Shown here one piece after another: positions 13,251 through 39,100 of a DNA stretch of 64,000 nucleotides. The stretch lies in NCBI RefSeq assembly GCF_011386835.1, contig NC_088797.1:30194001-30258000 (forward strand). The letters are read 5' to 3'. The notes beneath the pieces are model-generated. The model did not search any database and was not told where the DNA came from. It worked only from the letters and a program-made list of their open reading frames with translations. A program made the position numbers and the translations under genes. This DNA is from Chrysemys picta bellii. Taxonomy: Eukaryota. Positions within the stretch are counted from its first letter, which is position 1. Each line of letters begins with the position of its first letter.

Positions 13251-14327
13251 GCGGCGGCGGCATAGTTCTTACCAGGGGAGCCGAGTGACACGGGCTGTGC
13301 TGGCCGCCCCGCGGCACAGAGCTGCCCTTTGCAGACATTGCGGATTGTGGCAGGCGTCAAAGTGTCGAAGAATTAAAACAATGAGCCATCAAAGAAAGGC
13401 TGGGATGGGGGGCAGCGCACCGCCCCGCCCGCGGCTGTACACAGCCAGAGCGAGGACACCTTGGGCAGCGGTGCCCCATCCAGCCCAGGCTCAACCATCT
13501 CATCCACCTCATGGTTTCTAATGGCTCTGTGAGCTGCTTCAGACGTGCCTTTGGACCCTGTACAGCTGCCTACTTACTGTGTTGTTTAGTAAGCCCAGCA
13601 AGTCCAAACCAAACTATGGCAATGCCATTGCAAGCAGAGAATTTAGCCTGGCTTGGGAAGACCCGTTCTTGTTTATAGAAGGGAAAGAGTCTAGGCCTAG
13701 AGTGGTGGTATGGAACACTGCAGCCCTATGGAAAATGTTTGATTTTTAGTGGCATTTTACATAAACCTCTGCAGAAATTAGCAAAAAATATCCCACTGGA
13801 TCGGCTTTGCAGGGGGAGTTAGTGCTCCACTGGAATGTTCATTGGCTGTCAAAGGGAAAGGATCTCAAAAGGTTTGGGAAACAAAGAGGACCAGTGCTAA
13901 CATTTTTGGAAAAGAGGAATGAACTCGTTGACAATTGCAAGCTTATTAAAGGCAAGGACTAGATAAGTGATCTAGCTTTCCTTATCGATATTGTGTTTCA
14001 TCTCAACACGTACAGGGAATCATTTGCCTTTTTGCTACACTGTTCAGTTGAGTTGCCTCTTTTATATAAAAACTGTGACTCTTTCAAAATAGTTTGTCCA
14101 AATAATTTGGACCACTTCATTCATTTTGCATCAGTTAAAAATTGAGAATGACAGGGGTATAAATGATGAGAAACTCCACCATGCAGTGTCTTCACTGTTA
14201 GAGTCATTTGAGAAGATTTTTAAGGTTGATAAGCACACCATGGCCCTTCTTACTACTTCTTTCACTGTTTTGTACGCTGATGTTGATAATTACCCTCCAA
14301 ATTTACAGAAATTCTTAAACTAATATA

Positions 14328-14880
14328 CGCAAAATAATTAATGGACACAAATCTGACATCGGGAATCATAATACTCAAAAACCAGTGGGAGAACACTTTA
14401 ACCTGTCTGGTCATTCAATGACAGACCTGCGGGTGGCTATCTTACAACAGAAAAACTTCAAAAAAGAGACTCCAAGGAGAGACTGTTGAGCTGGAATTGA
14501 TATGCAAACTAGATACAATCAACTCAGGATTGAACAAGGACTGGGAATGGCTGAGCCATTACAAACATTGAATCTATCTCCCCTTGTAAGTATTCTCACA
14601 CTTCTTATCAAACTGTCTGTACTGGGCTATCTTGATTATCACTTCAAACGTTTTTTTTCTCTTACTTAATTGGCCTCTCAGAGTTGGTAAGACAACTCCC
14701 ACCTGTTCATGCTCTCTGTATGTGTGTATATATATCTCCTCAATATATGTTCCACTCTATACGCATCCGAAGAAGTGGGCTGTAGCCCACGAAAGCTTAT
14801 GCTCCAATAAATTTGTTAGTCTGTAAGGTGCCACAAGTACTCCTGTTCTTTTTGCGGATACAGACTAACACGGCTGCTAC
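14328..14880 (+). mobile_element. 5'-truncated Penelope-like retroelement (GIY-YIG C-terminus plus terminal repeat)
   Basis: Encodes PVGEHFNLSGHSMTDLRVAILQQKNF...ELICKLDTINSGLNKD; 15-bp TSD TCTTAAACTAATATA at 14313-14327 and 14881-14895. Confidence 0.85.
14763..14802 (+). ncRNA. Minimal type I hammerhead ribozyme motif (U4C core variant)
   Basis: GCAU-CCGAAGA-A-GUGGGC(UGUA)GCCCAC-GAAA-GC-UU-AUGC: stem I 4 bp, stem II 6 bp, palindromic AGCU stem III. Confidence 0.7.
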
Positions 14881-15298
14881 TCTTAAACTAATATATTAAT
14901 TCTGGACCTGAGAATAAATTCAAAGAATTCTGTACATCTCCAGTGAACCAAGACATGACACCATGTTGGAAATTTTTCCCTAAAGGAGATTTTCCTCAGA
15001 TAGATGACCTGGCCCTTCGATATGTGGGCAGTCTTGGATCAACGTATCAAAACTTCCATTTTCAGAGAGGAAGTTTATTAAAGGTAAATATCACGCCTAG
15101 GTCACCATTTCCTAACTCACTGACTTACATGTACTAGCATCAGCAAAGCTGAACCCAGGGATTGATGACATTGTGGATAAGAAGGGACATTCAGAAACCC
15201 CTTTAGACTGCTACCATGACACCCAGATCATGGTTAGTTTTATTCTGCATTAATTACATTATAGGAAATACTGTAATTAACTGTCATATTTTTTAGAC

Positions 15299-21339: not shown

Positions 21340-21520
21340 TCCCAGAGCTGGGGATAGAACCCAGGAGCCCTGACTTCCAGCCCCACTCCCATTGTAGCCA
21401 CTAGACCCCCCTTCCCAGACCTGGAAATAGAACCCAGGAGTCCTGACTCACAGTCTCTCTTGTTCTAACCCACTAGACCCCACTCCTCTCCCAGAGCTGG
21501 GGATAGAACCCAGGAGTCCT
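21340..21520. repeat. GC-rich dispersed tandem repeat (CCCAGAGCTGGGGATAGAACCCAGGAGTCCTG...CCACTAGACCCCACTCC)
   Basis: The unit recurs here and at about 16570, 17190, 20920, 23440, 23740, 24420-24620, 39680 and 46450. Confidence 0.75.
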
Positions 21521-21903
21521 GTGTCCAACCTGGCTGGGCCGGGGGCCTGGGGCTCTTTAAACAATCAGCGGGGAGGCAGGTGTGCTCCAGACAAGATCCG
21601 GGCTCCGCGTGCTCTCCCACTCCCAGCCTTGTTTCCCACATTCAGTGCCTCTCACCTGGATTCTGGGGTGGGAGACGTCAGTGCCTGTGCAGCCCCGCGG
21701 GGGGAGCCAGGGAAAGACAGAGCTAAGTAGGGGTGAGGGGAGAGAAATGTTGGATGAGCTTGAACAGAGCTCTGGCTCTTGGGAGGCACTGGCAGGCGGC
21801 TGCTTAGGTCGGGTGGGGCAAGGAAGCCTGCAGGGAAGGCGGGATCCAGGGCTGTCCCAGGTGGAGCGGGGGAGGTGAGGGGATCTGGGCTGTGGGGGAG
21901 AGG

Positions 21904-22460
21904 CAGGGCTGGCTCCAGGCACCAGCCGAGCAAGCTCATGCTTGGGGCGGCAGATTCTAAGGGGCGGCTTCCCTCCAATCCTTTTTTTTTTTTTTGCTTT
22001 GCCACTCCGGCCGCCCTGCAGAGTTTTTTTTCTTTTTGGTTTGCCCATCTGGCCGCCCTGTAGGGGGCGGCGGCGCAGAGGAGGGGGAGCACCCTGCTGG
22101 GAGCGGGCTGCGCGCTCTGTCTGCCCCAGCCAGTGCCAGGACTGCAGCAAGCCCGGCAGTCCACGTCCTTCCCTGCCCGCCGACCGGAGTGGCGCGGAGC
22201 TCTCCCGGCAGGCGGCGCAGCGGGAGGGGCCACGTGGCGAGCGCCCCGCTGAAGGAAGCCCTGGCCACCCCCCTTCTCTACCCCTCCCCCCGCTCTCTCC
22301 TCTTCCCCCCGCTAGCCGGGGCACACATTCCGCTGCCCGGGGCACATCTGCAGCGCAGGGAGTCCCCCTGCACCCTGGCTCCGGCCGGCCCGCACCGCAC
22401 CGCACGGTTTTGTTTTGGTTTTTTTCGCTTGGAGCAGCAAAAAAGCCAGAGCCGGTCCTG
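21904..22460. mobile_element. CpG-rich hAT MITE (CAGGGCCGGCTC family)
   Basis: TIRs CAGGGCTGGCTC / GAGCCGGTCCTG; perfect TSD GGGAGAGG; same family as 38735-38981. Confidence 0.88.
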
Positions 22461-23570
22461 GGGAGAGGGAGAGAGAATCCAGGGCTGTCTGGGGTTGTCG
22501 GGAGTGGAGGGGGGATCCAGGGCTATGGGGAGTAGGGGGACCAAGGGGATCCAGGTTGGAGGGAGCAGGGGTCCGATGGGGATCTGGGGCTGGGGGAAGT
22601 GGAGGGGCGAATCTAAGGTTGAGGGGGACTCAAGGCTGGAGGGTGAGAGGAACATGGGCTGTAGGAGGATACAGGGTTGAGGGGCTCTAGGGCTGGGGGC
22701 AACAGGGGAGATCCAGAGCTGACAGCTTCCCTCGCCCCATGCCACTGGTTGCAGCATTGCTGGACTCTTACCTCCCCCCGGCCATGTTTTCTCCCGCCGT
22801 GCTCCAGGACACTAGGGTTCTGTCTCTCCAGACTGGGGCGCTCCCAACCCCCTGGCAGCATATTTGATCTCTTTACTGTCCCTAAGCTGGATTTCCCACT
22901 ACCCCCCTCCTGTTTCTAATTTCATCTGCCAGGGCACCATTCCTTCCATGATCCCATGGTTGCCACCAAACAGCACCCCACAATCCCAGTATTACCAATG
23001 CAGCAACACCTGCCTGAGTCTGCAGGGAGCCTGAGCTGATTGCTCCAGAAAGGGGGTGCTGCTCCAGGCTTCTCAGTGAGGCATTAACCCTGAAAACTAG
23101 AGACTGTGAGTTCATCTGGGTAAGGACTCTCTCTCTCATTGTGTCTGTGCAGCGCCAGGCAAAATGGGGCACCTGATCTCAGTTGTGGCCCATGCAGTGT
23201 CTGGCATGATGGGGGCCATGACCTTGGTCAGGGTCTGTGGGGGGCCCTGATCTCACTTAGGGGTCTATGCAGCGGACAGCACAATGGGGGCCCAAATCTC
23301 AGTCAGGGTCTGTGCAGCACCCAGCACTACAAGGGCCCCCATCTCAGCCAAGTCCTCTAGCTGATACTGTAATAAAAACAATAATAATAATAATAATAAT
23401 GACTCCCAGCCTCCCCCTCCTCTAACTACAGGGCCACATCCTCCTTCCAAAGCCAGGCGTAGAACACAGGAGTCCTGGCTGGCTCTCAGTTTCCAGCTCA
23501 GCACGCCCCCTGCTCGATTTGGTGCAGTAACCCCAGTAAGAAAAAAGCAAACTCTGCTCTCAAAGACTCA

Positions 23571-23576
23571 TTTATT
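23571..23576 (-). terminator. Probable TSGA10IP polyadenylation signal
   Basis: Minus-strand AATAAA about 530 nt past the stop codon. Confidence 0.6.
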
Positions 23577-24100
23577 TGCCGGTACTTTGCGTCTCTAATG
23601 CAGGGAGCTGTATGTGACCCTCTCCGTTCCAGACGGGGTTATTTTCAGGCGGTGTCCAGAGAGTCAAGAGGAGACTCTAGCCTCTTGTTCAGCTGCAACC
23701 TGTCAGCAGGACATGAACCAAAGGAACCACTAGATTCCCCCTCCCCTCCCAGAGGTGGGAGTAGAACCTAGGAGTCCTGAGAGGGCTAGATGAGCCAGGA
23801 GGTTCAGCAGGCCCTGTGCTGGGAGATGTATAGCCCCTGGACAAAGGAAAATGGAAGATCCAGCTGGATCTATAGTGCCTGGAGTACCCAACATCTGGGT
23901 GATCCATAGTGCTCGGGGCTGGGACAGCCAGCTGGTGAGCTATAGGATCCAAGGCAGTGAGATCTATAGGGCTCAGAGCTGTGTAATCCAGGGGGACTCT
24001 ATCAGACCTGGGGCAGTGGGATCCAGCAGGGATCTACAGGGGCAGGGGGATGTATAGGACCCAGGAAAGCGGGATCCATGGGGGATATCCAGCACCTGGT

Positions 24101-27100
24101 CTAGGAGAGGCTCCGTGACCGCCCCTGTGTGGCTCTTCCGGCTGTCCTGGCAGTGTTGCCCTTGGCCAGGCGCCCTGCATGTCTCCACAGCAGCCTCTCA
24201 TCGATGCCCAGCGCTGCCAGCACCTGGGAGAAGCGCCGCTCCACAGCCAGGCGAGCATTGGTCTGTGAGGTGAGAGGCAGGGACATCATTCACATCACCC
24301 ACAGAACGGAGCTGGGCTCAGGCTGCCCACCCCACTGCCCACACTTGAACCTCTCCCAGCTGAGCTAGCAGGGATCTACTATAGCCAAGAGAGCAATAGG
24401 AGTTCACAACCAGGAATAAAATCCAGGCACCCTGGCTCCCGGCCTCCCTGCTCTAACCACTAGACTCCCCTCCCAGAGCTGAAGATAGAACTGAGGAGTC
24501 CTGGGTGCCAGTTCCCCCTGCTCTAACCATTAGACCCCACTTCCCTCCTAGAGCCAGAGATGGAACCCAGGAGTCCTGGACTCCCAGCCTCCTCCCCCTG
24601 CTCTAACCCACCAGCTCCCACTCCTTTCTCACCTGCATGACACGCTCAAAGAGGTAGGGGCGGCTCTCCACCCTCTCTTGGATCTCCCGCAGCTGGGCAT
24701 CGTACTCTGTCATGCGCTGCTGCTCCAGCCTCCTAGAGCAACAGCACAGAGAGGTAACAGAGGGGTAGCCGTGTTAGTCTGAATCTGTAAAAAGCAACAG
24801 AGGGTCCTGTGGCACCTTTGAGACTAACAGAAGTACTGGGAGCATAAGCTTTCGTGGGTAAGAACCTCACTTCTTCAGATGCAAGATCTGAAGAAGTGAG
24901 GTTCTTACCCTCGAAAGCTTATGCTCCCAGTACTTCTGTTAGTCTCAAAGGTGCCACAGGACCCTCTGTTGCTTAGCACAGAGAGGGTGACTGCAGCAAA
25001 TCCCACCCCCAATCCCTGCCCCCCCTTCAGTGCCCATTCACAAGGACACTCAGGGATCTGCTGGATCCTCTGCCCCAGGGCACTGGCTGTACTGGGGAAA
25101 TATTACTGCCCACCAGGATCAGAACAGATACCCCAATCCCAACACCTAGGCCCCAGGTCCTTTAGGATCTGGTCCAGTAGAGTTGGAGGATCCAGGGGGA
25201 ACTATAGGGTCTGGGAGAACCAGGGGATCTATAGCTGCTGGGCCATTGGGGCTGGGAGATGCAAGAGGCTCTGTGAAGTCTGGGAAATCGTGGGAGATCT
25301 ATAGGGTATGAGAGATCTGGAAGCTCTATAGGGCCTGGGTGAGGGGAGGACTGGGTGATCCTGCAGGATCGTTGGGTTTAGATCAGAATCTGAAATCTGC
25401 CCATTAAGCTTATCTCAAATCTTCCTTTTTCACTTAATGACAGGTTTCAGAGTAGCAGCCGTGTTAGTCTGTATCCTCAAAAAGAATAGGAGTATTTCCG
25501 AAGAAGTGGGTTGTAGCCCACGAAAGCTTATGCTCTAATAAATTTGTTAGTCTCTAAGGTGCCACAAGTACTCCTGTTCTTTTTCACTTAGGTAATTTAA
25601 CACCTGTCCCAGTCACATGGCTCCTCAGTTTCAGCCCAGCACTCCTGCAATGTCTGAGCCCAGGAGTCCTCAGGGGTCTTTGTGTGTGTCACTGTTGGTG
25701 TCCGTGTGGTGTGTAGAGTGTGGATGTGTGTCCAAGTGTGTTTGTGTCGGTATAGGTGTTGGTGTAGTTGTGTGTATTATGTGTGTGTCTGGGCATTGGG
25801 GGGGTGTCTGTATGTAGGTTTTATGTCTGGGTGTCAGTGTGTCTGCATGTTTGTGTGTCAGGGTGTTCAGGGTATGTGTGTTGGGGGGTGTCGTGAATGT
25901 TTGTGGAAGTCGGTGTGTCTGTATGTTGGGGTGTGTGTGTCAGGCTGCCTGGATGTCAAGGGGTGTTGGGGTGTCTGGGTGTCAGCGTGTTAGGAGGGAA
26001 TCTGAATGTTGGTATGTCTGGACGTTGGTGGTGGTCAAAGTGTCTGGGAGTTGGTGTGTGTGTGTGGAGGGATTAGAGAGGGGTGTTGGTTTGTCTGGAA
26101 TTGGGAGGTGTCAGGGTGTCGGAATGTGTGTGTCAGTGTCTTTGCATGCATCCGAAGAAGTGGGCTGTAGTCCACGAAAGCTTATGCTCTAATAAATTTG
26201 TTAGTCTCTAAGGTGCCACAAGTACTCCTGTTCTTCTTTTTTCAGTGTCTTTGGTTGTCAATGTGAAAAATCAGTGTGTTGGGGTGTCAGGGGAGGGTAC
26301 CAGAGAAAGGTGTCAGACTGTCTGGGTGTCAATGTATTGGGCTGATGTTTCGGTGTTGTTGTGTCTGAGTATTGGGAGGGGCGGGGTATGGGAGGTGTTG
26401 TGGAAGTCGGCATGTTTAGGTGTCAGCAGGGAGATAGTGTGTATGGGTGTAGCTGTATAGGGGTGTGTCAGCGTGTAGTGGGTGTCTGAGTGTTGGCGGA
26501 GTCAGGGAGTCTCGTGTCAGCATAGCCAGGGCATATCTTTACCAGATGTTTCCATGCTGACAGTCTCTCACTCTTGGTTTATGTGTGTGTGTGTGTGTTT
26601 TTTTAACTCCTAATTTTTTTAACTCCCACTTTTGGGCCCCATTCACCGTAAGACCCAGTCAGAAGAGGAGCAGGATTTTTGTGGGGAACCAGCCACACCT
26701 AGTGGTTAATAACAATAATAAATACTAAATAGCTATTGATCACCATTATTAATAATTACTACATCTATATTAAATAGGGTGACTAGATGTCCCAATTTTA
26801 TAGGGACAGTCCCAATTTTTGGGTCTTTTTATTATATAGGTTCCTATTACCCCCCACAGCCCCGTCACAATTTTTCACATTTGCTGTCTGGTCACCCTAA
26901 TATTAAATAACGAAGATAAAATACTATTGATAATCATTAATACTACAATATTAATCACTATTATAAATAATTATTCAATTAATATTCATGCTAAAGGAGT
27001 ACTCAAGGACGAGAAGGCCATTGTGGAGAAACTAAATGAATTCTTTGCATCAGTCTTTACGGCTGAGGATATGAGGGAAATACCCAAACCTGAGCCATTC

Positions 27101-30100
27101 TTTTTAGGTGACAAATCTGAGGAATTGTCCCAGATTGAGGTGTCATTAGAGGAGGTTTTGGAACAAATTGATACATTAAGGAACAGATGGTATTCATCCA
27201 AGAGTTCTGAAGGAACTCAAATATGAAATTTCAGAATTACTAACTGTGGTATGTAACCTATCATTTAAATCAGCTTCTGTACCAAATGACTGAAGGATAA
27301 CTAATGTGACGCCAATTTTTTAAAAGGGCTCCAGAGGTGATCCCGGCAATTACAGGCTGGTAAGCCTGACTTCAGAACTGGGCAAACTATAGTAAAGAAT
27401 AGAATTGTCAGACACATAGATTAATATAATTTGTTGGGGAAGAGTCACCTTGCCAAATGCTCTTAAACAAAGTAAACTGTCGTGGGATAAGAGGGAAGGT
27501 CCTCTCCTGGATCAGTAACTGGTTAAAAGATAGGAAACAAAGGGTAGGAATAAATAGTCAGTTTTCAGAATGGAGAGAGGTAAATAATGGTGTCCCCAAG
27601 GGGTCTGTACTGGGCCCAGTTCTATTCAACATTTTCATAAATTATCTGGAAAAAGGGGTAAACAGTGAAGTGGCAAAATTTGCAGATGATATAAAACTAC
27701 TCAAGATAGTTAAGTCCAAAGCAGACTCCAAAGAGTTACAAAAGGATCTCACAAAACTGAGTGACTGGGCAACAAAATGGCAGATTAAATTCACTGTTAA
27801 TATATGCAAAGTCATACACACTGGAAAACATAATTCCAACTATATATATAAAATGATGGGGTCTAAATTAGCTGTTACTACTCAAGAAAGAGATCTTGGA
27901 GTCATTGTGGAGAGTTCTCTGAAAACATCCGTTCAATATGCAGCAGCAGTCAAAAAAGCTAATGATGTTGGGAATCATTAAGAAAGGGAAAGATAACAAA
28001 ACAGAAAATATCATATTGCTGCTATATAAATCCATAGTACGCCCACATCTTGAATATTGTGTGCATATGTGGTCACCCCATTTCAAAAAAGATATATAGG
28101 AACTGGAAAAGGTTCAAAAAAGGGCAACAAAATGATTAGGGGTATGAAACAGCTTCCATATGAGGAGAGATTAATAAGATTGGCACTTTTCAGCTTGGAA
28201 AAGAGACGACTAAGGGGAGATATTATAGAGGTCAATAAAATCATGACTGGTGTGGAGAAAATAAATAAGGAAGTGTTATTTACTCCTTCTCATAACACAA
28301 GAACTAGGGATCACCAAATGAAATAATAGGCAGCAGGTTTAAAACAAACAAAAGGAAGTATTTCTTCACACAATGCACAGTGAACTTGTGAAACTCTTTG
28401 CCAGAGGATGTTGTAAAGGCCAAGACTATAAAAGAACTAGATAAGTTCATGGAGGATAGGTCCATCAATGACTATTAGCTGGGATGGGCAGGGATGGTAT
28501 CCATAGCCTCTGTTTGCCAAAAGCTGGGAATGGGCGACAGGGGATGATCACTTGATGATTACCTGTTCTGTTCATTCCCTCTGGGGCACCTGGCATTGGC
28601 CATTGTTGGAAGACAGGATTCTGGGCTAGATGGACCTTTGGTCTGACTCAGTATGGCCGTTCTTATGTTCTTAATATTTGTAACAAATATTAAATTAATA
28701 TTGATTAGTATCCATAACTACAAACTACTATTATTCTCTATTAAAATATCAAAATATTGTTTAGTACTGTTCATAAATACTAAATTAATATCAATCATTC
28801 ATCAATACTAAATATTAGTTACTATTAAGAGACAAAAGATGAGTTGTGGGACAACAGATAAAGTGGTGGAGGCTTGTGGATAGGGAAGTTAGTCTGAGAT
28901 TTAAGGATTCTATGGAGGTAAGACAATGACCAAACCAACAGTGATGATACTAACAAGATTTTGGAGAAAATATCCAAACTTATTAAAAAAGTACACAAGC
29001 TGTCTGTGGCCTAACAAAAGAAAGAAAATATGGCAAGGAGCTGTGGTGATGGTCCATTAATGTGTAGAAGGCAGTAAAGAAGGAAAGGTTGAAGCGATGG
29101 CAGAAAGTAAGAACAGGGGAAAGTTATGAGGAATACAAGCGGGTAAAGAAAAGGGTGAAAAGAGCAGTTGTGGAAGCTAAGAGTCAGGCATTTTAGAGCC
29201 TTATATGCACACCTACTAACAAAGAAAGGTGGAAAAGAAATATTAGATTCGCCACAATTAAGCAAAGAAGCAAAGCAAAGAAACAGAGGACTTGGAAGCT
29301 GTGAAGTGTGTCAAAGATGAAAATGGAAAAGTACTGCTGGAAGACGGTGGAATCATTAGGAGATGGAAGTAGTTTTATGAGAAACTGTTAAATGAAGAGA
29401 ATGTGATGAAAACATTGAGGGAAGTATCCACAAGCAGTAACCTCACAGGACCTATCAGTATGATGGAGACGCAGACAGCGCTAAAGATGATGAAGCTTGG
29501 GCAGGCAATGGGACTGGCCAGTGTCCCAATCAAGCATTTAAAGCATTAGGCCATGAGGGAGTGGGATCAATGACAAACTTCTTCAACTTAATTCTCTGTC
29601 CTGGGAAAAAGCCTGAGGTGTGGAGCAAGAGCACATTGGTCCCTAACTTTATTCATAAAGGAGATGTGCAAGAATATAGTCGTTACCAACCCGTCATTGT
29701 AACGAGTCACATGAGGAGCTGGCTGGAAAGAATTATCGACAAAAGACTTTGGGAGAAGCTCTGCATCAAATAAGCAACAACCCGTTTGGGTTTATGCCAG
29801 GAAGGCTAACAATGAACGCAGTGTTTGCTGCCCAAATATTGTAGGAGATGTACAGGGAAATAACAGTATGTTCTGTTGTGAAGATAAATACAACTGGAAA
29901 GGGACCTAAGAGCACTGCATTAGAAGAAAATGGCTTACAAATCAGCCAGCAAAAAACAGAATGTTTTGTTGAGTGCGACAATGAAAAGCCAGTAAAATTA
30001 GGTGGTACAAAGTATGTGCAATAATTTAAATACCTTGGTTTAGTGCACTGCTGAGCCATGATGGGAATATAGATGCAGATGTTAGGAGCTACATGAAGAG

Positions 30101-33100
30101 CGCTTGGTATAAATGGAGGAAGTTGACAGGAATTATCTTCTATACAAATATGCCAAGTATTCAAAAGAGCAAAGTGTGTAGGATCATGTTTAGGCCAGCT
30201 ATGACGTATGGGTCGGAATAATTGCCAATGAGGAAGAGAGAAGAACAACTACTTCACACTGCCACTGCCAAAGCTCAGGTGGACACTGGGTAAGAGGAGA
30301 GCTATTAGGCTATGCAGTGAAACAGTACAGGCCATGATGCAGGTAGCCACCATCACAGAAAAGCTGAGGGAGTATCAACTGAGATGGCTGGGACATGTGA
30401 GACAACGAGATGTGTGATATGGTAGCCAGAGACAAGAACGACTAGTCACAGGACAAAGACCATAAGGAAGACCTAGAAAAAGATGGTTAGAGATGTTGAA
30501 GGAGGAGATGAAGCAGGTTTTTGTCAGCTTGGAAGACCCACTTGACAAGAACACTTGGAGATGAGGGTCAAGAGCTGCTGATCCTGAGTGATGGGACAAA
30601 GCGAAAGAGAAGACGAATAGATACTTAGCTCTTCTATAGTATTTTTCATCAGTAGATCTCAAAGTGCTTTATAAAAGCGGTTGGTATCGTTATCCCCATT
30701 TTACAGATGGAGAAACTGAGGCACAGAAAGGTGAAGTGGCTTCCTCAAGGTCACCCATCAGGCCATTTGCAGAGCCATGAATAGAACTCAGGTCTCCTGA
30801 GTCCCAGTCCAGTACTCTACCCAAGAGTATGCACTGAATACTAACATATATTGTAATGTTAATAAATATTAAATTAATATGATCATAAATACTAAATATT
30901 ACTACTACTAATTACTAAATATAAATTACTATTGTTAATAAATGTTAAAATATCAGTAGTTCCTGACTACTAAGTTAATATCACTATTAACAATTACTAA
31001 ATTAATACTGAGAGAGACAAGCTGGGTGATGTAATATCTTTTAAAGGACCAAATTCGGTTGGTTACCTGACCCAGCTTGTCTCTCTCATATCCTGAGACC
31101 AACATGGCTACAATAACACAGCAAACAATAAATTAATACTAACGACTATGTTTAAAAATATGATGTGAATCATGATTTATATTCATAAATAATATTCATC
31201 GCTATTAAGAATAGGAATATATTCACTAAAGCAGTTAATATTAAAATTAATATAAATAATTCATAGATACGAAATATCTATATTAATAATTATAGACTCA
31301 TAGACTTTAAGGTCAGAAGGGACCATCGTGATCATCTAGTCTGACCTCCTGCACATGGCAGGCCACAGAACCTCATCCACCCACTCCTGTAATAGATGCT
31401 TAACCTCTGGTTGAGTTACTAAAGTTCTCAAATCATGGTTTAAAGATTTCACGTACAGAGAATTCACCATTTCAACTAGTTTAAACCTGCAAGTGAACTG
31501 TGCCCCACGCTGCAAAGGAAGGTGAAAACTACCAAAGGTCTCTGCCAATTCCCAAATATGGCAATCAGTCAGACCCTGAGCATATGGCCAAGATTCGCCA
31601 GGCAGATATCTGGGAAAGAATTCTCTGTACTAACTCCGAGCCCTCCCCTTCTAGTGTCTCATCTCCAGCCATTGGGGATTTTTGCTACTGGCAGTCACAG
31701 ATGGGCCACATGCCATTGTAGGCAGAGTCCCATCATACCATCTCTTCCATAAAATTATCAAGCTCAGTCTTGAAGCCAGTTAGATATTTTGCCCCCACTG
31801 CTCCCCTGGGAAGGCTCATCCAGAACTCCACTCCTCTGATGGTTAGAAACCTTCACCTAATTTCAAGCCTAAACTTGTTGATGGCCAGTTTACATCCATT
31901 TGTTCTTGTATCCACACTGGTGCTTAACTTAAATAGCTCTTCTCGCTCCCTGATATTTATCCCTCTGATGTATTTGTAGAGAGCAATCATATCTCCCTCG
32001 GCCTTCTTTTGGTTAGGCTAAACAAGCCAAGGTCTTTTATTTCCCTCTCATAATGTAGGTTTTCCATTCTTTGGATCATCCTAGTAGCCCTTCTCTGTAC
32101 CTGTTCCCTTTCTTAAAGATGGGAGACCAGAATTGCACACAGTATTCCAAATGAGGTATCACCAGTGCTTTGGATAATGGTACTAACACTTCCCTGTTTC
32201 TACTGGAAATACCTAGTCTGATGCTTCCTAGGACTGCATTAGCCTTTTTCACAACCGTATTACATTGATAGCTCATAGTCATCCTGTGATCAACCAATAC
32301 ACCCAGGATTTTTCTCTTCCTCCGTTGCTTCCAACTGATAAGTCCCTGGGTCTAGCTTTTAGCAAAAATTCTTGTTGTTAGTCCCTAAATGCATGACCTT
32401 GCACTTTGCACAATTAAATTTCATCGCTTTTCTATTACTCCAGTCTACAAGGTCATCGAGAGCTTTTTGTCTGATATTCCGGTCCTCCTCAGTATTGGCA
32501 ATACCTCCCAAATTTGTGTCATACTCAAATTTTATTAGCACACTCTCACTTTTTGTGCCATGGTTAGTAATAATAATTTTAAATAAGATTGGTCCCAAGA
32601 CCGATCCCTGGGGAACTCCACTAGTAACTTCCCTCCAGCCTGACAGTTCACCTTTCAGTATGACCTCTTTGTAGTCTCCCCTTTAAGCAGTTCCTTATCC
32701 ACCTTTCAGTTCTCATATTAATCTCCATCTTCTCCAATTTAATTAATAATTGTTCATGTGGAACTGTATCAAATGCCTTACTGAAATCTAGGTAGATTAG
32801 ATCTACTGCCTGTCCTTTGTCTAAAATATCAGTTAACTTCTCAAAGAAGATTGGTCTGGTATGATCTACCTTTTGTAAAGCCATGTTGTATTTTATCCCA
32901 ATGACCATTCATCTCTATGTCCTTAACTACATTCTCTTTCAAAATTTGTTCAAAGACCTTGCATATAATTGAGGTCAAACTAACAGGCCTGTAGTTTCTT
33001 TTGCCCTTGCTTAAAAATAGGAACCATATTAGCAATTATCCAGTCATAGTGTTAATATTAAATATTGATCATTCATAAATACTAAATATTATTACTCTAT

Positions 33101-36100
33101 TATGAATGCAAAAATATTAATGTATATGGTTCATAAATATTATGTTAATAATGATCATTGATAGACACTGGGTTAATATCACTATTAACAAATACTACTT
33201 GCTTATAATTAATTTGTGTTATTATTATTATGATTAATTATTATTATTAGTAGTAGTATTGTTATTATTAATAATAATAATCATCATGTTTATTATGGTA
33301 GTGCCTAAGGGCCAACCAAGGTCGGACCCCATTTTGCAAAGCACTCATCTAACACCAAGTAGCAGATGGTCCCTGCCCTGAAAAGTTTACAGTCTACATA
33401 GACCAGACAGACACAGGTTGGGGGAAAGGGTGTAACACACAAGCAGAGTGAACACTGTGATTAATTAATAATTGAATATTAATGTGTGTGGGGGTATGTG
33501 TGAAATGTCATTGAGGCTGGTGAGAGTGGCTGCTACCCTTTATTTAAGATAGCAGAAAGAGACAGTAAAGCACCACTCCCAGTACAACAAAGGCAGTTGT
33601 GCGTTTGCCCAGGGATTGGAACAATGTGGGCAGATGGTTTTGGTTAGGCATGGACCACGTGTGTGGCTTACTTTACACTACAAAGTTGTGCCGTCATAGC
33701 TCTGTTGGCTAGGAGTGCGAAAAAAACCACACTCCCTGGCTCACATAGCTGTGCCAGCAACGCTTCTGGTGTAGACACAACTATACTGACACAAGAGCGC
33801 TTCTGTAGATTTAGGGCTGGTCTACAGTAGACAATTAGATTGACCAAATTATATCACTAAGTGACGAAGTTAAGCCGACTTAACCCCCAGTGGAGACAAC
33901 ACTGGTTCGATGGAAGAATTCTTCCACTGACCTAGCCACCACCTCTCAGGGAGGTAGATTTGCTACAGTGACCGGAGAATCCCTCCCATCACTGTACTAA
34001 GGGCTAGTTTACACTATAAGTGCCACATCAGCGCAGCTGCGCCGCTGTAGCACGTCTGGTGAAGACGCTCTATGCCGACGGGAGAGAGCTCTCCCATCGG
34101 CATTATAACTCCACCTCCATGAGAGGCGCCAACATAGCGCTGTCCGCACCGGCGCTTAGGTTGGTATAATTTACGTCACTCAGGGATGTGGATTATTCAC
34201 ACCCTGAGTGATGTACGTTATATTGAAGTAAATGGTAGTGTAGACAAGGGCTAAGTGTTTATGCTGAAGCACTACAGCAGGGCAGCTGCAGCACTGCTGT
34301 AGGTTTTTAAGTGTAAACATAGCCCTAGCTAATGTCATTCAGGGAGATGGTGTAGCTATGCTGGTGGAACTCCTTCTGCTGACCTACACTGCATCTCCAT
34401 TAAGGGGCTCTACCAGGATAGCTATGCTGCTATACTATGCCAGCAAAACATTCGCAGTGTAGACAGGCCCTATACCCGTGTATGCGTAAGAGAAGCAAAA
34501 GAGACCACACAGGAAGACAGACACAGACTCAGCCCAGACAAGCACGGTGTAGGACCCAGAGAGAAGCCTGAAGAGGCTTGAGGACTTCTGGGCCTGGTGC
34601 TACTGAAGAGGCTTGGGGCTGTGAGCAAATAAACTACCTCCTGTTTGGTTCCTCCTGTGTTCAAGGAAACAGGACTTTGTACAATCTTTGTTAAAAAACA
34701 GAATTGCACCCCAAAAAATAAATAAATAAATACCTGACTCCATCATCAATTTCTCCTCCTAACTGGAACAACTCACACCACCCTGAATTTGGCTAACTGC
34801 TCACATCAAAAGAAGTAGCAATTAACTACTACTGTTACCAAATATTAAATTAATATGATTCACCATTAAAATACTAACTGATATTAATCACTAACATTTA
34901 TTACTAAATTAATATTAGCTGCTATTTTTAATAAATATTGAAATAATACTGATCACCCTTAACACTAAATTTCTAATAATCACTAATATTTAAAAGTACT
35001 ACATTAATATGAACTGTTGTGAAACAATTACATTAATATTGATCACCATTATTAGCATTACATTAAAATAAATCAATATTATTTATTACTGAATTAATAT
35101 AGGCTACCACTGATAATTATGCATGTTGATTTAATATTGATCACTGTTAATAACCATACATTATTATTACATTTATTAATACATTATTTTAAATTGTTGT
35201 TGGTTATAATCAATATTAAATTATTGTGTATCTATATTATGAACAATTATTACAATTAATTATTAGTATTTTATCAAGCCCACTGATTTCAAGAAGGCCA
35301 CTTATGTGAGAAAAGTTACACATAAATAGAAGTGTTCTCTAGATCGTTATTATTAGGTGTATCGGTATCTAGAGGCCCTGACCAAGATTGTGGCCCCTGT
35401 TGTACCAGGTGCTGCACAGACACACAGGGTCTGTCTACTATGCAACTGGGAAGTGTGACTGCAGAATATGTAGCCAGGCCTGAGCTAGCTGATCCAGCTA
35501 GCGTGCTAAAAATAGAAGTACAGTCATGGCCGCACAGACGGTGGAACAAGCTAGCTACCCAAGTACAAACATACCCAGGGTTCTGAGTGGGATTGTACTT
35601 GGCTGCTAATCTGTGCTGCCACGGCTACACAGCTATTGTTAGCATGCTAGCTGGATCAAAGGTAGTTCAGGTATTTCTACATGTTCTGCAATCACACCTC
35701 TCAATTGCACTGTAGACAGCCTCCCAGTGAGAGCCGGTCTCTGCCCCAGTGAGCTGCCATTCTAAACAGACAAAGGGGCAGAGAGCAAACTGAGGTTCAG
35801 AGTGGAAAAAGGGACTTGCTGAAGTACAGTGGTAGAGATGGGAGCACAACCCAGGTGTTCCGAGCACCCGTCCTCTGCCCTATCTACTGACAATTGATTC
35901 CTATAAGAGAGGGTAGGGGGCCATGGGTCAGATTTAAGGGGCACCGTCAGAACTTCGGGGGAGCCCAAGGCTGGGCTAGCAGGGGGCTGAGGGTCAGGAT
36001 TGAGAGGCACCAGCAGCACCATGTGGTGGTTTCCACACTCCTCTCTCTCTCACACCAGGCTACTCCCTTCTTCCCCTCTCTGTTACCTCAGCTCTTCCCT

Positions 36101-39100
36101 CTTCCTTTGCGTGGTCTGGGCCAAGCTGCCCGGGGGACTGTAGGCTGCCAGGCACTTGGCCACTTCCCTCTGCACCTGCTGCTGCTTGACCCGGCGCTGC
36201 TCTGCTCGCCTCTTCTCCTGCTTCTCCCGACGCTCCCACTCCAACAGCAACAGCCTGCACCAGGAGCAAAGGAGAAGGCTCAGCCAGGTGGCGTCTATAA
36301 AAATTGTTCCAACTCCCCTGGCTGGGGGGAACCTCTGGCTGGGATAGCAGAGGGCTGTGGGTCAGGATTGAGGGGCAGAGCTGGGGGCAGTGGGGGCTGG
36401 AAGCCAGGGCTGGGATAGCAGGGGGATCTAGGTAGGCAGGCCAGTTGTCTGCTTTTAGCTGGACAGTCCTGCCTTTCTAACATTAGTCCCCTATCTGGCA
36501 TGTTCTTCAAAATGGTGCCCCTCGTGTGGCACTGGCAGAGGCGGGCTCGTGCCATTACCAGTAGCACTGGAATGTTCGGTACTTGGGGAACGTGTGAGTG
36601 GCCACCCTAGCTCTAGGGTCAGGATTGAGGGTTACCAGCAGATCTAGGGAGGGGGGAACCTAGGGCCGGGATAGCAGAGGGGCTGCAGCAGAGCTGGGGG
36701 GAGGCCAGGGCTGGGATAGCTGGGGTGGGAATTGATTTAAGGGCACTGTCCATACCTGGTGGCCTCCTGCCGTTTGTCAGAGGCTCTGGTGGATGGCACT
36801 GAGGGCAGGGGGTCGAACTCTGAGCAGGACTGGGACCCGCAGTGGAAGCTCCAGAGCTGGCGCAGCTGTTGCTGCTCCCAGTCTCTGAGCTCGTCCTCAG
36901 GCTGGTGCTGAGAGCTGCTGGCCACGTGGAGGTGGAAGGGTTTGCAGATGGTCAGCTTGGCTGAGAGGGGGACACAGAAAGCATTAACGGAGGGTCCCAG
37001 AACCCCTCCCTCATCAGCTGCACTGCCCCACCCCAGAAACAGCTGCATCTCAGCACCAGGGAAAGGGTCTCTATAAACAGCTCCTGTGCCCCACCCCAGG
37101 GATTCCTGTATAAACAGCCCCACCTCAGAGGCAGCTCCACCTTAGCGCCAGGCAAGGGGTTCTGTATAAACGGCTTCTTTACCCTACCCCAAAAGCAATT
37201 GCATCCATCTCCTTGGCTCACCTCTCACTTTCCTCTTCTCCAGCTGCTCCTGGAACCTCTTGTGGAGTGTCTCAAAGTCGGGGATGGTTTGGTTGATGAT
37301 GGGCTGGAACCGGGTCTTGTCTTTGGGGGCCAGCCCCCTGCCCTTCCTTCTGTGCCCCCTGGGGCTTGGGTCCTGGGGCTCTGTGGCCAGGCACAGGGCC
37401 TCAGCTCTCAGCCTGGCCCGGAGCTGCTGGGCGGAGGTGATTGCCTCCCAGGCTGGGGAGGACACAGCCTCTTCCAGACTCAGCAGCTGCTGAGCCAGTT
37501 GGAGCCAGTGCCTCCGCTCTTCCTGGAGCTGGCGTTTGCGGGCCTCGCTCCGGGCCTCCATCTTCCAATACAGCGAGGAGAGGGTGCTGGGGGAGGGATG
37601 GGGGGCTTGCTTGATCCTGCCCCGCTCAGTGCTGCTGCGCCCCCGTAAGCTGCCAGCACGTTGGTCTACACGGCCCTGCAAATCTGTCACTGTTGGGCGG
37701 ACACTGTCACGGGGGGAGTTGTTGGGGGCTCTGCGGGGCTCCCCCTTCTTCCCCTTGTCCAGGGAAGGGGCTGGGAGGAGGGCACGACCGTTAAGCGAGA
37801 ATTCCTCCCACATCCACTGGAAGGGGAAGGAGGGGCGGGGACTGTGGGGCAAGGAATCAGGGGTGCAGGAGTGAGCTGGCTTGGAGAGAAGGGTGTCCTC
37901 AGTAACGTCTCTCTGCCTGGTGGTGGGAAGGAGAGGAGATGATGAGTGTCAGGTCAGAGCAACGGGGCCATCTAGTCTGGTAGCCTCCAGATCAGACCTA
38001 ATGGACTCATCTAGTCTAGTATCACCATCCCGCCCTGGCCATTCTAGACTGGACCAAAGGGTTCATCTACAGGGCATACCAAACCCCTGACCACATCTCC
38101 CTCTGAGCTGGCAACAGACTCCTAGCTGCCCCCCTCCCCACCGCTCTAACCCAGTAGAGCCCACTCCCCTCCCTTTGTCTGTTCAGACTTTGAGCTCTTT
38201 GGGATTGGGACTGTCTCTCACTGTGTGTCAGGGCAGTGCCCAGTGCAGTGGGGGCCCCGATATTGGTCAGGGTGTGTGCAGTGCCTGGCACAACTATGGC
38301 CCTGGTCTTGGGATCTGTGCAGCACCTGCCACTAAACAGGTGCTGATCTCAGTTGGCACATCCAGGTGCTACTAATATAATCTCCATGGAGCTGCAGCAA
38401 GGATGAGTTTGGCCCAATGGCCATAAGGATCCCATCCAACCTACTCACCTTCCTGCAGATGGTGCTGAGTCCTGGTCTCCGTCAGAGGTGTCACTCACAC
38501 ATGGCTCCTGCATCTTGCACTGTGGGGCCTGGCTGCCTCTTCTCCCTGAAGGGGGGCCTCTGGGTGATCCCTTCCTCTTCCCTTTCCTCATCAAGACCAC
38601 GATTCCGTCACCGGAATTGAAAACCTCCTCCTGAAACCGCAGAGCAGAGGCAAGAGGGACCCAGCTTTTCCCCAGGGAGACTGGCTGGCTCAGGGCAGCA
38701 GGGAATGGGACACGGGGCCTTTCCCCTCTAGGAGCAGGGCCGGCTCCAGGCACCAGCTTAACAAGCAAGTGCTTGGGGCGGCCAAGGGAGAGGGGCGGCA
38801 CGTGCGGCAATTAGGGGGCAGCAGGTCCCTCGCTCCCTCTAGGAGCGAAGGACCTACAGCCGAACTGCCGCCGCCGATCGCAGCTTTTTTTCCCCCCCCA
38901 ATTGCCGCCGCCGGTCGCAATTGCTATCGCGGCTTTTTTTTTTTTTTGCTTGGGGCGGCAGAAATGCTGGAGCCAGCCCTGTCTAGGAGATCCTGGCTCA
39001 AAGCTCCCTAGTCCACTAGCCCCCACTCCTCCCAAAGCTGGGAATAGAGTGTCCTGATGACCTGACTCCCTTGCTCCTTAGCCAGTGGTGTCGCTCTACA

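What the first reader, a model, noticed from the sequence alone, without database searches (positions are those of the whole stretch)
24733..24986. Self-masking hammerhead hairpin inserted at a TSGA10IP 3' splice site
Seen: a Penelope-derived insertion with a 12-bp TSD begins 21 nt upstream of exon 6, and the TSD is part of the polypyrimidine tract. It forms an 89-bp near-perfect hairpin. The arm nearest the exon carries a canonical CUGAAGA/GAAA hammerhead on the pre-mRNA strand, and its complement is transcribed first. The insert also supplies a consensus-like branch point GACUAAC (24773-24779) about 40 nt from the AG. Inference: the ribozyme is neutralised co-transcriptionally by its own antisense arm, which makes the insertion tolerable. 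It could become a switch through A-to-I editing or helicase unwinding, controlling pre-mRNA cleavage or exon 6 inclusion.
Basis: partly seen in the sequence, partly recalled or inferred. Interest (0 to 1): 0.72.

Follow-up and report, generated by a model that had tools for sequence, protein, structure and literature searches.

The report
Penelope fold-back insertion at TSGA10IP acceptor
A young copy of a very common turtle jumping gene, shaped like a hairpin and carrying a small ribozyme motif that almost certainly cannot cut on its own, landed 22 bases in front of a coding exon of the testis gene TSGA10IP; its only unusual feature is that it now probably supplies that exon's splicing branch point.

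Summary
A 220-bp insert (24755-24974) lies between perfect 12-bp target-site duplications. It sits 22 nt upstream of the 100-nt penultimate coding exon of turtle TSGA10IP (minus strand, 24732-24633).

- **Hairpin:** it folds into an 88/89-bp hairpin (-175 kcal/mol, z = -28).
- **Ribozyme motif:** the exon-proximal arm carries a complete hammerhead core on the pre-mRNA strand.
- **Branch-point motif:** GACUAAC lies at -42 from the acceptor.
- **Age:** a DNA contig from a related organism (about 1% divergent) joins 24742 directly to 24975. That is an exact empty site, so the insertion is young and lineage-specific.

The hairpin is the standard Penelope-like-element insertion form: a 5'-truncated copy plus an adjacent inverted copy. 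A second copy in this window has the same form, and the scan already holds 32 notes on such hairpins elsewhere in this genome.

The ribozyme is the minimal PLE type. It has no helix III, a 4-bp helix I and no Rfam hit. Published tests found no cleavage for single motifs of this type. Masking by the antisense arm is therefore physically real but not needed to explain why the insertion is tolerated. Nothing supports a switch.

The specific point worth keeping is that the insert split the old weak branch site from the acceptor and probably replaced it. Interest is low.

The parts
24633..24732 (-). Penultimate coding exon of TSGA10IP (100 nt; ...RLEQQRMTEYDAQLREIQERVESRPYLFERVMQ). It is the fifth of six coding exons mapped in the window.
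   Evidence: Translation. 88-97% identity to turtle TSGA10IP proteins. A spliced RNA contig joins 24633 to 24262 (X16 record 22).
24733..24734 (-). AG of the 3' splice site
   Evidence: Read directly from the sequence. The exon boundary agrees with the annotated turtle proteins (...REELR|RLEQQ...).
24743..24754 (.). Proximal target-site duplication AGCACAGAGAGG (CCUCUCUGUGCU in the pre-mRNA; intron positions -11 to -22; part of the polypyrimidine tract)
   Evidence: D5. The empty site in organism D keeps one copy only.
24755..24791 (-). Unpaired 3'-terminal part of the element (...UUUUUACAGAUUCAGACUAACACGGCUACCCCUCUGUUA). It contains the branch-point-like GACUAAC at 24779-24773, with the branch A at 24774 = -42.
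   Evidence: In RNA contigs 24755 is a recurrent copy end (table 7). The stretch has no stable structure of its own (z = 0.05).
24792..24880 (-). Sense arm of the hairpin. It carries the minimal hammerhead (24882-24842): helix I GCAU (24882-24879) pairing with AUGC (24845-24842), CUGAAGA (24878-24872), unpaired A (24871), helix II (24870-24854), GAAA (24853-24850), palindromic AGCU then U, with predicted cleavage after 24846.
   Evidence: The architecture matches the min-HHR description in PMC4209133.
24881..24885 (.). Hairpin loop (CUUGC in the pre-mRNA) and inversion junction
24886..24974 (-). Inverted 5' copy. It is antisense to the ribozyme on the pre-mRNA and is transcribed first. On the + strand it reads as a second hammerhead copy with a helix II mismatch at 24911.
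24975..24986 (.). Distal target-site duplication AGCACAGAGAGG
   Evidence: D5.
24987..24991 (-). Candidate ancestral branch site GUCAC (A at 24988). It would be at -24 in the empty allele and is now at -256.
   Evidence: reconstruction of the empty allele by deleting 24743-24974. That deletion is exactly the form seen in organism D.
24104..24262 (-). Coding part of the last TSGA10IP exon, joined to the exon above in RNA
   Evidence: X16 record 22; X15 record 17.

Best explanation
This is one ordinary, recent copy of an abundant turtle Penelope-like retroelement (PLE). Only the element's 3' region was copied, about 125 nt including the PLE minimal hammerhead. As is usual for PLEs, an inverted 5'-truncated copy was laid down next to it during integration. 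That, not selection, produced the 89-bp hairpin. The element's endonuclease left a 12-bp duplication.

The copy landed in the last intron-exon junction region of TSGA10IP, between the old weak branch site and the polypyrimidine tract of the 100-nt penultimate coding exon.

The hammerhead motif is inert here for three reasons:
- It lacks helix III and needs a second sense copy to dimerise.
- The transcript has only one sense copy.
- That copy is locked in a -175 kcal/mol duplex.

The gene most likely keeps splicing because the element's own unpaired 3' end supplies a near-consensus branch site (GACUAAC at -42) followed by a 74% pyrimidine stretch with no AG before the original acceptor.

Shown: the anatomy, the TSD, the empty site in a relative, family membership, the fold energies, and inclusion of the exon in an RNA contig of one organism.
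Inferred: the inertness of the ribozyme (from literature on this class), use of the new branch site, and the snap-back or twin-priming origin of the hairpin.
For: - **Insert boundaries:** TSD and hairpin. The exact empty site in organism D (contig joins 24742 to 24975) and a probable one in organism E are.
- **Same family elsewhere in the window:** three other copies at about 14.3-14.9 kb, 25.45-25.57 kb and 26.15-26.27 kb. All three short copies have 12-bp TSDs. The 25k copy also has an inverted 5' arm.
- **PLE origin:** the 14k copy has a degenerate GIY-YIG-like endonuclease C-terminus directly upstream on the same strand. The protein Atlas gives GIY-YIG as a weak lead at 0.86.
- **Abundance:** summed contig depth over the hairpin bins is about 1.8 million against about 31 for single-copy flanks. 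The scan has 32 earlier notes on such hairpins in this genome.
- **Literature on insertion form:** PLE insertions often carry an inverted 5'-truncated copy adjacent at the 5' end and a tail (PMC8557442).
- **Literature on the ribozyme:** min-HHRs with a 4-5-bp helix I, a long helix II, an unpaired nucleotide 5' of helix II and no helix III lie in PLE repeats and occur in turtles. A single motif gave no detectable cleavage, and dimers were low (PMC4209133; PMC6765202).
- **Splice signals:**
- **Expression:** the exon is joined to the last exon in RNA of organism C.
Against: - No RNA evidence covers the acceptor itself.
- I could not show that the RNA run's organism carries the insertion.
- Use of the branch point is not measured.
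- The hairpin base is only 17 nt upstream of the proposed branch A, which might hinder U2 snRNP binding (my inference from the known upstream anchoring site).
- Pfam did not recognise the endonuclease remnant, so the PLE assignment rests on motif reading, architecture and literature.
- No cleavage assay exists for this turtle subfamily. Its core is fully canonical, whereas the other three copies in the window have C at core position 4.
Confidence: 0.8

Rival explanations
1. The hammerhead is a live ribozyme that is kept silent co-transcriptionally by its antisense arm. A-to-I editing or helicase unwinding can release it, giving conditional pre-mRNA cleavage or control of exon inclusion.
For: The core nucleotides are all canonical, and helix I and helix II can form. 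The antisense arm is transcribed first, and the duplex is extremely stable. The position next to a frame-critical exon would make cleavage consequential.
Against: - This ribozyme class shows no detectable activity as a single motif and low activity even as dimers.
- The transcript holds one sense copy only.
- The local hammerhead fold is not better than shuffled sequence (z = -1.08).
- There is no Rfam hit.
- The hairpin is the generic insertion form of the family.
- The insertion is absent from close relatives, so no conservation argues for function.
- Editing would also alter the essential core adenosines (inference).
Confidence: 0.04
2. The insertion is mildly harmful. It weakens or disturbs the acceptor (exon skipping, cryptic acceptors, intron retention) and is a young variant, possibly still polymorphic, that selection has not yet removed.
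For: - It separates the ancestral branch site from the acceptor by 232 nt.
- It places an 89-bp duplex 59 nt from the AG.
- Skipping a 100-nt exon would shift the frame.
- The insertion is young: one arm mismatch, identical TSDs, and an empty site in relatives about 1% divergent.
- In Xenopus, PLE-derived retrozyme copies are depleted from introns and exons (bioRxiv 10.64898/2026.07.22.740005).
Against: The insert supplies a better branch consensus and a longer pyrimidine tract than the empty allele had. The exon and the downstream exon are intact in the window and 88-97% identical to other turtles. The exon is included in the one spliced RNA contig seen.
Confidence: 0.13
3. The old branch site (GUCAC, A at 24988) is still the one used. 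The hairpin loops out 183 nt and brings it back to within about 70 nt of the acceptor, so the hairpin itself, not the element's GACUAAC, rescues splicing.
For: The hairpin base (24792/24974) lies 14 nt from the old site. With the stem treated as a compact unit, the path from the old site to the AG is about 72 nt. From my own knowledge, RNA structure is known to shorten effective branch-to-acceptor distances in yeast.
Against: The old site is a poor match to yUnAy and sits in a G-rich context. The new site matches 6 of 7 positions of UACUAAC, lies at a typical distance and is unpaired. AG dinucleotides at -48 and -54 lie between the hairpin and the acceptor and would compete if scanning started from the old site.
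Confidence: 0.08

Closest known systems
Penelope-like element (PLE) insertions with an inverted 5'-truncated copy (Evgen'ev & Arkhipova 2005; Craig et al. 2021, PMC8557442)
   Same: 5'-truncated copy ending at a constant 3' terminus, an adjacent inverted copy forming an inverted repeat, a short variable tail at the 3' end, a TSD, and a hammerhead in the terminal-repeat region.
   Different: This copy is very short (220 bp, no ORF), so the two arms form one nearly perfect hairpin. It also sits inside a 3' splice-site region.
Minimal hammerhead ribozymes of PLEs (Cervera & De la Pena 2014, PMC4209133; Lunse, Weinberg & Breaker 2017, cited in PMC6765202)
   Same: Canonical core boxes, a 4-bp helix I, a long helix II preceded by an unpaired nucleotide, and no helix III but a palindrome (AGCU) that allows dimers. 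The type has been reported in turtles.
   Different: Helix II here has a bulged A. No activity data exist for this turtle subfamily. Only one sense copy is present in the transcript.
Intronic hammerheads of amniotes (HH9 and HH10; de la Pena & Garcia-Robles 2010, cited in PMC6765202)
   Same: A hammerhead motif in the sense strand of an intron of a protein-coding gene.
   Different: Those are complete type I ribozymes with helix III. They are ultraconserved, active as monomers, and represented in Rfam. This one matches no Rfam model and is lineage-specific.
L1 5' inversions by twin priming, and inverted-repeat Alu pairs in introns (from my own knowledge)
   Same: An inverted 5' segment is joined to a sense 3' segment at microhomology. 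Here the TSD AGCACAGAGAGG resembles the element's AGCAACAGAGGG at the outer end of the inverted arm. The result is a long intronic dsRNA of the kind ADAR edits.
   Different: The retroelement class and endonuclease differ. The apex lies at a recurrent position just 5' of the hammerhead box rather than at random positions.
Transposable elements that donate splice signals (for example antisense Alu polypyrimidine tracts in exonisation; from my own knowledge)
   Same: A mobile element supplies a branch site and pyrimidine tract that an exon can use.
   Different: No new exon is created here. An existing, conserved acceptor appears to have had its branch site replaced.

Membership tests
Penelope-like element insertion | Target-site duplication flanking the copy | tested here: met
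   Perfect 12-bp TSD. The empty site in organism D keeps one copy. Two other copies in the window also have 12-bp TSDs.
Penelope-like element insertion | 5'-truncated copy with an adjacent inverted 5'-truncated copy | tested here: met
   Sense copy 24755-24885 plus inverted copy 24886-24974. Matches the description in PMC8557442.
Penelope-like element insertion | Derivation from an element encoding RT plus a GIY-YIG endonuclease | tested here: inconclusive
   The related copy at 14319-14882 has an endonuclease-like C-terminal remnant on the same strand just upstream of the hammerhead. Pfam gives no hit. The Atlas gives GIY-YIG only as a weak lead (0.86). No RT of PLE type lies in the window.
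Minimal PLE hammerhead (min-HHR) | Conserved core: C3 U4 G5 A6 N7 G8 A9, G12 A13 A14, A15.1/U16.1, H17 | tested here: met
   CUGAAGA ... GAAA-GCU-U on the minus strand at 24878-24846.
Minimal PLE hammerhead (min-HHR) | Short helix I (4-5 bp), long helix II with an unpaired 5' nucleotide, no helix III, and a palindrome for dimerisation | tested here: met
   GCAU/AUGC helix I, 6-bp helix II with one bulge after an unpaired A, and an AGCU palindrome, compared with PMC4209133.
Minimal PLE hammerhead (min-HHR) | Self-cleavage (as a dimer) | not testable with these tools
   Needs an in vitro transcription and cleavage assay.
Rfam hammerhead families (types I, II, III, HH9, HH10) | Match to the covariance model | tested here: not met
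   No hammerhead hit at the gathering threshold in the window, nor at E <= 10 in 24600-25100. The only hits are generic hairpin matches to miRNA models, all below their gathering scores.
TSGA10IP (FAM161 family) | Sequence similarity to named orthologues and the family domain | tested here: met
   92-96% identity to turtle proteins that NCBI names testis-specific protein 10-interacting protein. Pfam PF10595 at E = 9.8e-8, above its cut-off.
Functional branch point | Lariat formation at 24774 | not testable with these tools
   Only motif, distance, absence of AG and lack of structure could be checked.

The most novel reading that the evidence does not exclude
A lineage-specific PLE insertion has rewired the acceptor of a frame-critical TSGA10IP exon. 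Splicing now depends on a transposon-borne branch site 17 nt from the base of an 89-bp dsRNA. Exon inclusion would then be sensitive to dsRNA-binding proteins, ADAR or helicases in testis, with ribozyme cleavage possible only if the duplex is opened and a second copy is supplied in trans.
Probability: 0.06. Interest if true: 0.6.

Novelty: new member of a known kind. Interest (0 to 1): 0.24.

Why it matters
It matters little as a ribozyme story. The hairpin-plus-hammerhead form is the routine footprint of an abundant turtle retroelement, and this class of motif does not cut as a single copy.

Two small points are worth keeping:
- It is a clean natural case of a retroelement landing between branch site and acceptor of a conserved exon and apparently bringing a replacement branch site. 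Filled and empty states exist in closely related turtles, so the effect on splicing can be measured directly.
- Together with two neighbouring lineage-specific copies, it shows that this PLE family was active recently in this turtle lineage.

Tried and rejected
- **Rfam:** scans of the whole window (gathering threshold) and of the region (E <= 10) gave no hammerhead. Only miRNA-model hits appeared, all far below gathering scores; these reflect any long hairpin and were rejected as miRNA evidence.
- **First hammerhead pattern search:** it failed because I miscounted the spacer. The gapped pattern found both copies.
- **Pfam:** no hit on the exon alone or on several candidate open stretches. No hit on the endonuclease-like remnant.
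- **ARAGORN:** no tRNA in the window.
- **Read laying:** the single call gave contigs only. There is no strand, start, end or editing information, no coverage of the acceptor in RNA, and no way to tell whether organisms A, B and C carry the insertion. A-to-I editing and exon skipping therefore could not be assessed.
- **Hairpin as assembly artefact:** considered and rejected. It is TSD-flanked, belongs to a family with the same form elsewhere, and has a precise empty site in a relative.
- **Absence in organism D as a deletion:** considered and rejected. The contig keeps exactly one TSD copy.
Full report
**What is there.**

The gene lies on the minus strand. The stretch 24732-24633 translates to (R)LEQQRMTEYDAQLREIQERVESRPYLFERVMQ. 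It is bounded by an AG at 24734-24733 and a GT at 24632-24631.

A 254-aa open stretch further upstream (37948-37187) hits Pfam FAM161A_B above its cut-off. It also finds turtle proteins that NCBI names testis-specific protein 10-interacting protein, at 92-96% identity. Those proteins contain this exon at 88-97% identity, with the same boundaries.

Tblastn of those proteins on the window maps six coding exons:

| Coding exon | Coordinates (minus strand) |
|---|---|
| 1 | 39470-39321 |
| 2 | 37564-37217 |
| 3 | 36967-36755 |
| 4 | 36259-36086 |
| 5 (this one) | 24732-24633 |
| 6 (last) | 24262-24104 |

So this is the fifth coding exon and the penultimate one. It is 100 nt long, so skipping it would shift the frame. 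'Exon 6' could not be verified. TSGA10IP is confirmed.

**The insert.**

AGCACAGAGAGG occurs at 24743-24754 and at 24975-24986. Between the two copies lie 220 bp (24755-24974). The repeat finder reports 97-nt arms, but the outer 8 nt are a chance extension into the TSD. The true arms are 24792-24880 and 24886-24974: 89 nt, a single mismatch (24855/24911) and a 5-nt loop.

As RNA the 183-nt hairpin folds at -175 kcal/mol. Shuffled sequences give -50.8 +/- 4.4, so z = -28.

On the pre-mRNA strand the order is as follows:
- distal TSD;
- an arm that is antisense to the ribozyme;
- the loop;
- an arm that carries the ribozyme in sense;
- 37 unpaired nucleotides of element sequence (24791-24755);
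- proximal TSD (intron positions -22 to -11);
- GUUGCUCUAG, then the exon.

The insert therefore starts at -23, not -21.

**Direct proof of insertion, and its age.**

I laid public contigs on 21500-27400. A 633-nt DNA contig of organism D (run X11, record 5, depth about 30) matches 24595-24742 and then, without any gap in the contig, 24975-25459. It lacks exactly 24743-24974, which is the insert plus one TSD copy. That is an empty site.

A contig of organism E (X13, record 10) starts 139 nt before its match at 24975. It is probably empty too, although its other piece was not listed.

The flanks of D differ from the window by roughly 1% (table 8). The arms differ at 1 of 89 positions and the TSDs are identical. 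The insertion is therefore young and lineage-specific.

A second small copy of the family, at 26145-26266, is also skipped in both D and E. The family was evidently active recently in this lineage.

**What family it is.**

The window holds three more copies of a related subfamily (alignment A1).
- **14319-14882 (+):** the longest copy. Directly upstream of the hammerhead region, on the same strand, it reads in two frames ...INGHKSDI...VGEHFNLSGHS...RETVELELICKLDT..GLN.... From memory I recognise this as the C-terminal part of a GIY-YIG endonuclease. Pfam gives no hit on the fragment. The protein Atlas lists GIY-YIG clusters first, but at 0.86, which is only a lead.
- **About 25450-25572:** this copy has a 12-bp TSD (TAAGTGAAAAAG) and also an inverted 5' arm joined to a sense 3' end.
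- **26145-26266:** this copy has a 12-bp TSD (CAAAGACACTGA).

In RNA contigs 24755 is a recurrent end of alignment with unrelated flanks (table 7). It therefore marks a genuine terminus of the element.

Summed contig depth over the hairpin bins is about 1.8 million, against about 31 for single-copy flanks in run X11. This is not a copy number, but it shows a very abundant repeat.

The literature fits:
- PLE insertions are highly 5'-truncated. [quoted passage not shown]
- PLE terminal repeats contain minimal hammerheads. These motifs were found in turtles, and pairs on opposite strands 100-700 bp apart were already noted (PMC4209133).
- The scan itself holds 32 earlier notes on Penelope hairpins with hammerheads in this same genome. 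Two were followed up and judged ordinary. I treat these as leads, but they agree with what I see in this window.

**The ribozyme motif.**

On the pre-mRNA strand the arm reads GCAU-CUGAAGA-A-GUGAGGUUCUUACCCAC-GAAA-GCUU-AUGC (24882-24842). All core positions are canonical.
- Helix I is 4 bp (GCAU/AUGC).
- Helix II is 6 bp with one bulged A, preceded by an unpaired A.
- There is no helix III. Only the palindrome AGCU is present, and it can pair only with a second molecule.

This is the published min-HHR architecture. It is not a canonical hammerhead, and no Rfam hammerhead model matches even at E <= 10.

For this class, a single motif gave no detectable self-cleavage. Dimers and trimers gave low activity, mostly at non-physiological Mg2+. 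[quoted passage not shown]

The pre-mRNA contains one sense copy only, because the other arm is its complement. The local hammerhead-like fold is worth -10.8 kcal/mol and is no better than shuffled sequence (z = -1.08).

The complement is made first, and the duplex outweighs the ribozyme fold by more than 160 kcal/mol. But masking is not needed to explain why the insertion is tolerated. The hairpin is a by-product of integration, not a device.

I infer that promiscuous A-to-I editing of such a duplex would also change the seven conserved adenosines of the core. It would more likely destroy the ribozyme than release it.

**The splice-site consequence.**

I rebuilt the empty allele by deleting 24743-24974, which is exactly the form seen in organism D, and compared the last 120 intron nucleotides of the two alleles.

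| Feature | Empty allele | Filled allele |
|---|---|---|
| yUnAy motif within 120 nt of the acceptor | none | CUAAC within GACUAAC |
| Best branch-site candidate | GUCAC, A at -24, just after an AG at -28, in a G-rich context | A at -42 (24774), 6 of 7 matches to UACUAAC |
| Tract between branch and acceptor | about 22 nt | 74% pyrimidines, no AG before the acceptor |

In the filled allele the old site now lies at -256. The segment 24791-24733 has no stable structure of its own (z = 0.05).

The element's 3' end thus brings a ready-made branch site and pyrimidine tract. The GACUAAC belongs to the conserved terminal sequence of the family (CAGACTAACACGGCT in all copies that reach the 3' end).

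The most likely reading is that this site is now used. That is an inference. The only RNA evidence is one spliced contig (X16, organism C, record 22) that joins 24633 to 24262. It shows that the exon is included, but it stops at 24715, short of the acceptor. I also could not establish whether organism C carries the insert.

One caveat is that the hairpin base lies only 17 nt upstream of the branch A.

**Origin of the hairpin.**

The outer end of the inverted arm (AGCAACAGAGGG) resembles the target duplication (AGCACAGAGAGG). This fits priming of a second cDNA at microhomology, or snap-back synthesis.

In all three short copies in the window, the copy boundary or inversion apex falls 1-8 nt upstream of the CYGAAGA box. 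This agrees with an earlier scan note (s1-337942). It suggests that the template RNA begins there, perhaps at the promoter that PLE terminal repeats are said to contain. This is a side observation that I did not pursue.

**Verdict.**

- **Right:** a Penelope-derived insertion with a TSD in the polypyrimidine tract; the order of transcription of the arms; a plausible donated branch point.
- **Not supported:** a ribozyme that needs neutralising, and a switch.

The thing is a new copy of a known and locally very common kind. Its modest interest lies in the replacement of a branch site at a conserved acceptor, with filled and empty states available in close relatives for a direct test.

**Limits.**
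- I had one reads call, and it returned contigs only.
- The window has no N stretches.

Noticed in passing
window 26145-26266: A short copy of the same PLE family with a 12-bp TSD (CAAAGACACTGA). DNA contigs of organisms D and E skip it exactly, so it is a second lineage-specific insertion in the same intron.
   Followed up: partly
window about 25440-25585: Another PLE copy with a 12-bp TSD (TAAGTGAAAAAG). An inverted arm of about 80 nt that includes the hammerhead region is joined to only the last 60 nt or so of the sense 3' end. It has the same inversion form as the finding, but with an internal deletion.
   Followed up: partly
window 14319-14882 (+): A longer 5'-truncated PLE copy. A degenerate, frameshifted GIY-YIG-like endonuclease C-terminus is followed by the hammerhead region and the element's 3' end. 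It ties the hammerhead repeat to a PLE ORF on the same strand.
   Followed up: partly
window 14766-14772, 25500-25506 and 26155-26161 versus 24872-24878: The three copies of the abundant subfamily read CCGAAGA (C at the invariant core position 4). The copy in the finding reads CUGAAGA. The difference is a CpG/TpG transition, so either state could derive from the other.
   Followed up: no
window 24881-24885, about 25496 and about 26150: In all three short copies the inversion apex or copy boundary lies 1-8 nt upstream of the hammerhead box. This hints at a fixed 5' end of the template RNA, and it matches scan note s1-337942.
   Followed up: partly
window 24446-24624: Three tandem SINE-like units of 70-80 bp (CCCTGCTCTAACCACTAGAC...GGAGTCCTGG) start about 8 nt downstream of the exon's splice donor.
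   Followed up: no
window 7068-7140 (+): Rfam tRNA match at 36.5 bits, above the gathering score, but ARAGORN calls no tRNA. It is probably a tRNA-derived SINE head or a pseudogene.
   Followed up: partly
window 24700-24760 (-): In the minimum-free-energy fold of the pre-mRNA, the polypyrimidine tract (CUGUGCUGUUGCUC) pairs with the start of the exon (GAGCAGCAGCGCA). This local stem spans the acceptor. It would exist in the empty allele as well.
   Followed up: no
window 31850-33040 (-): LINE-type reverse-transcriptase fragments (YLDFSKAFDTVPH...) lie inside the 11.3-kb intron upstream of the exon.
   Followed up: no
window 36086-36259 (-): The fourth coding exon is present in the Emydura and Chelonia protein models but absent from the Caretta model P0001. 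This could be alternative splicing or an annotation difference.
   Followed up: no
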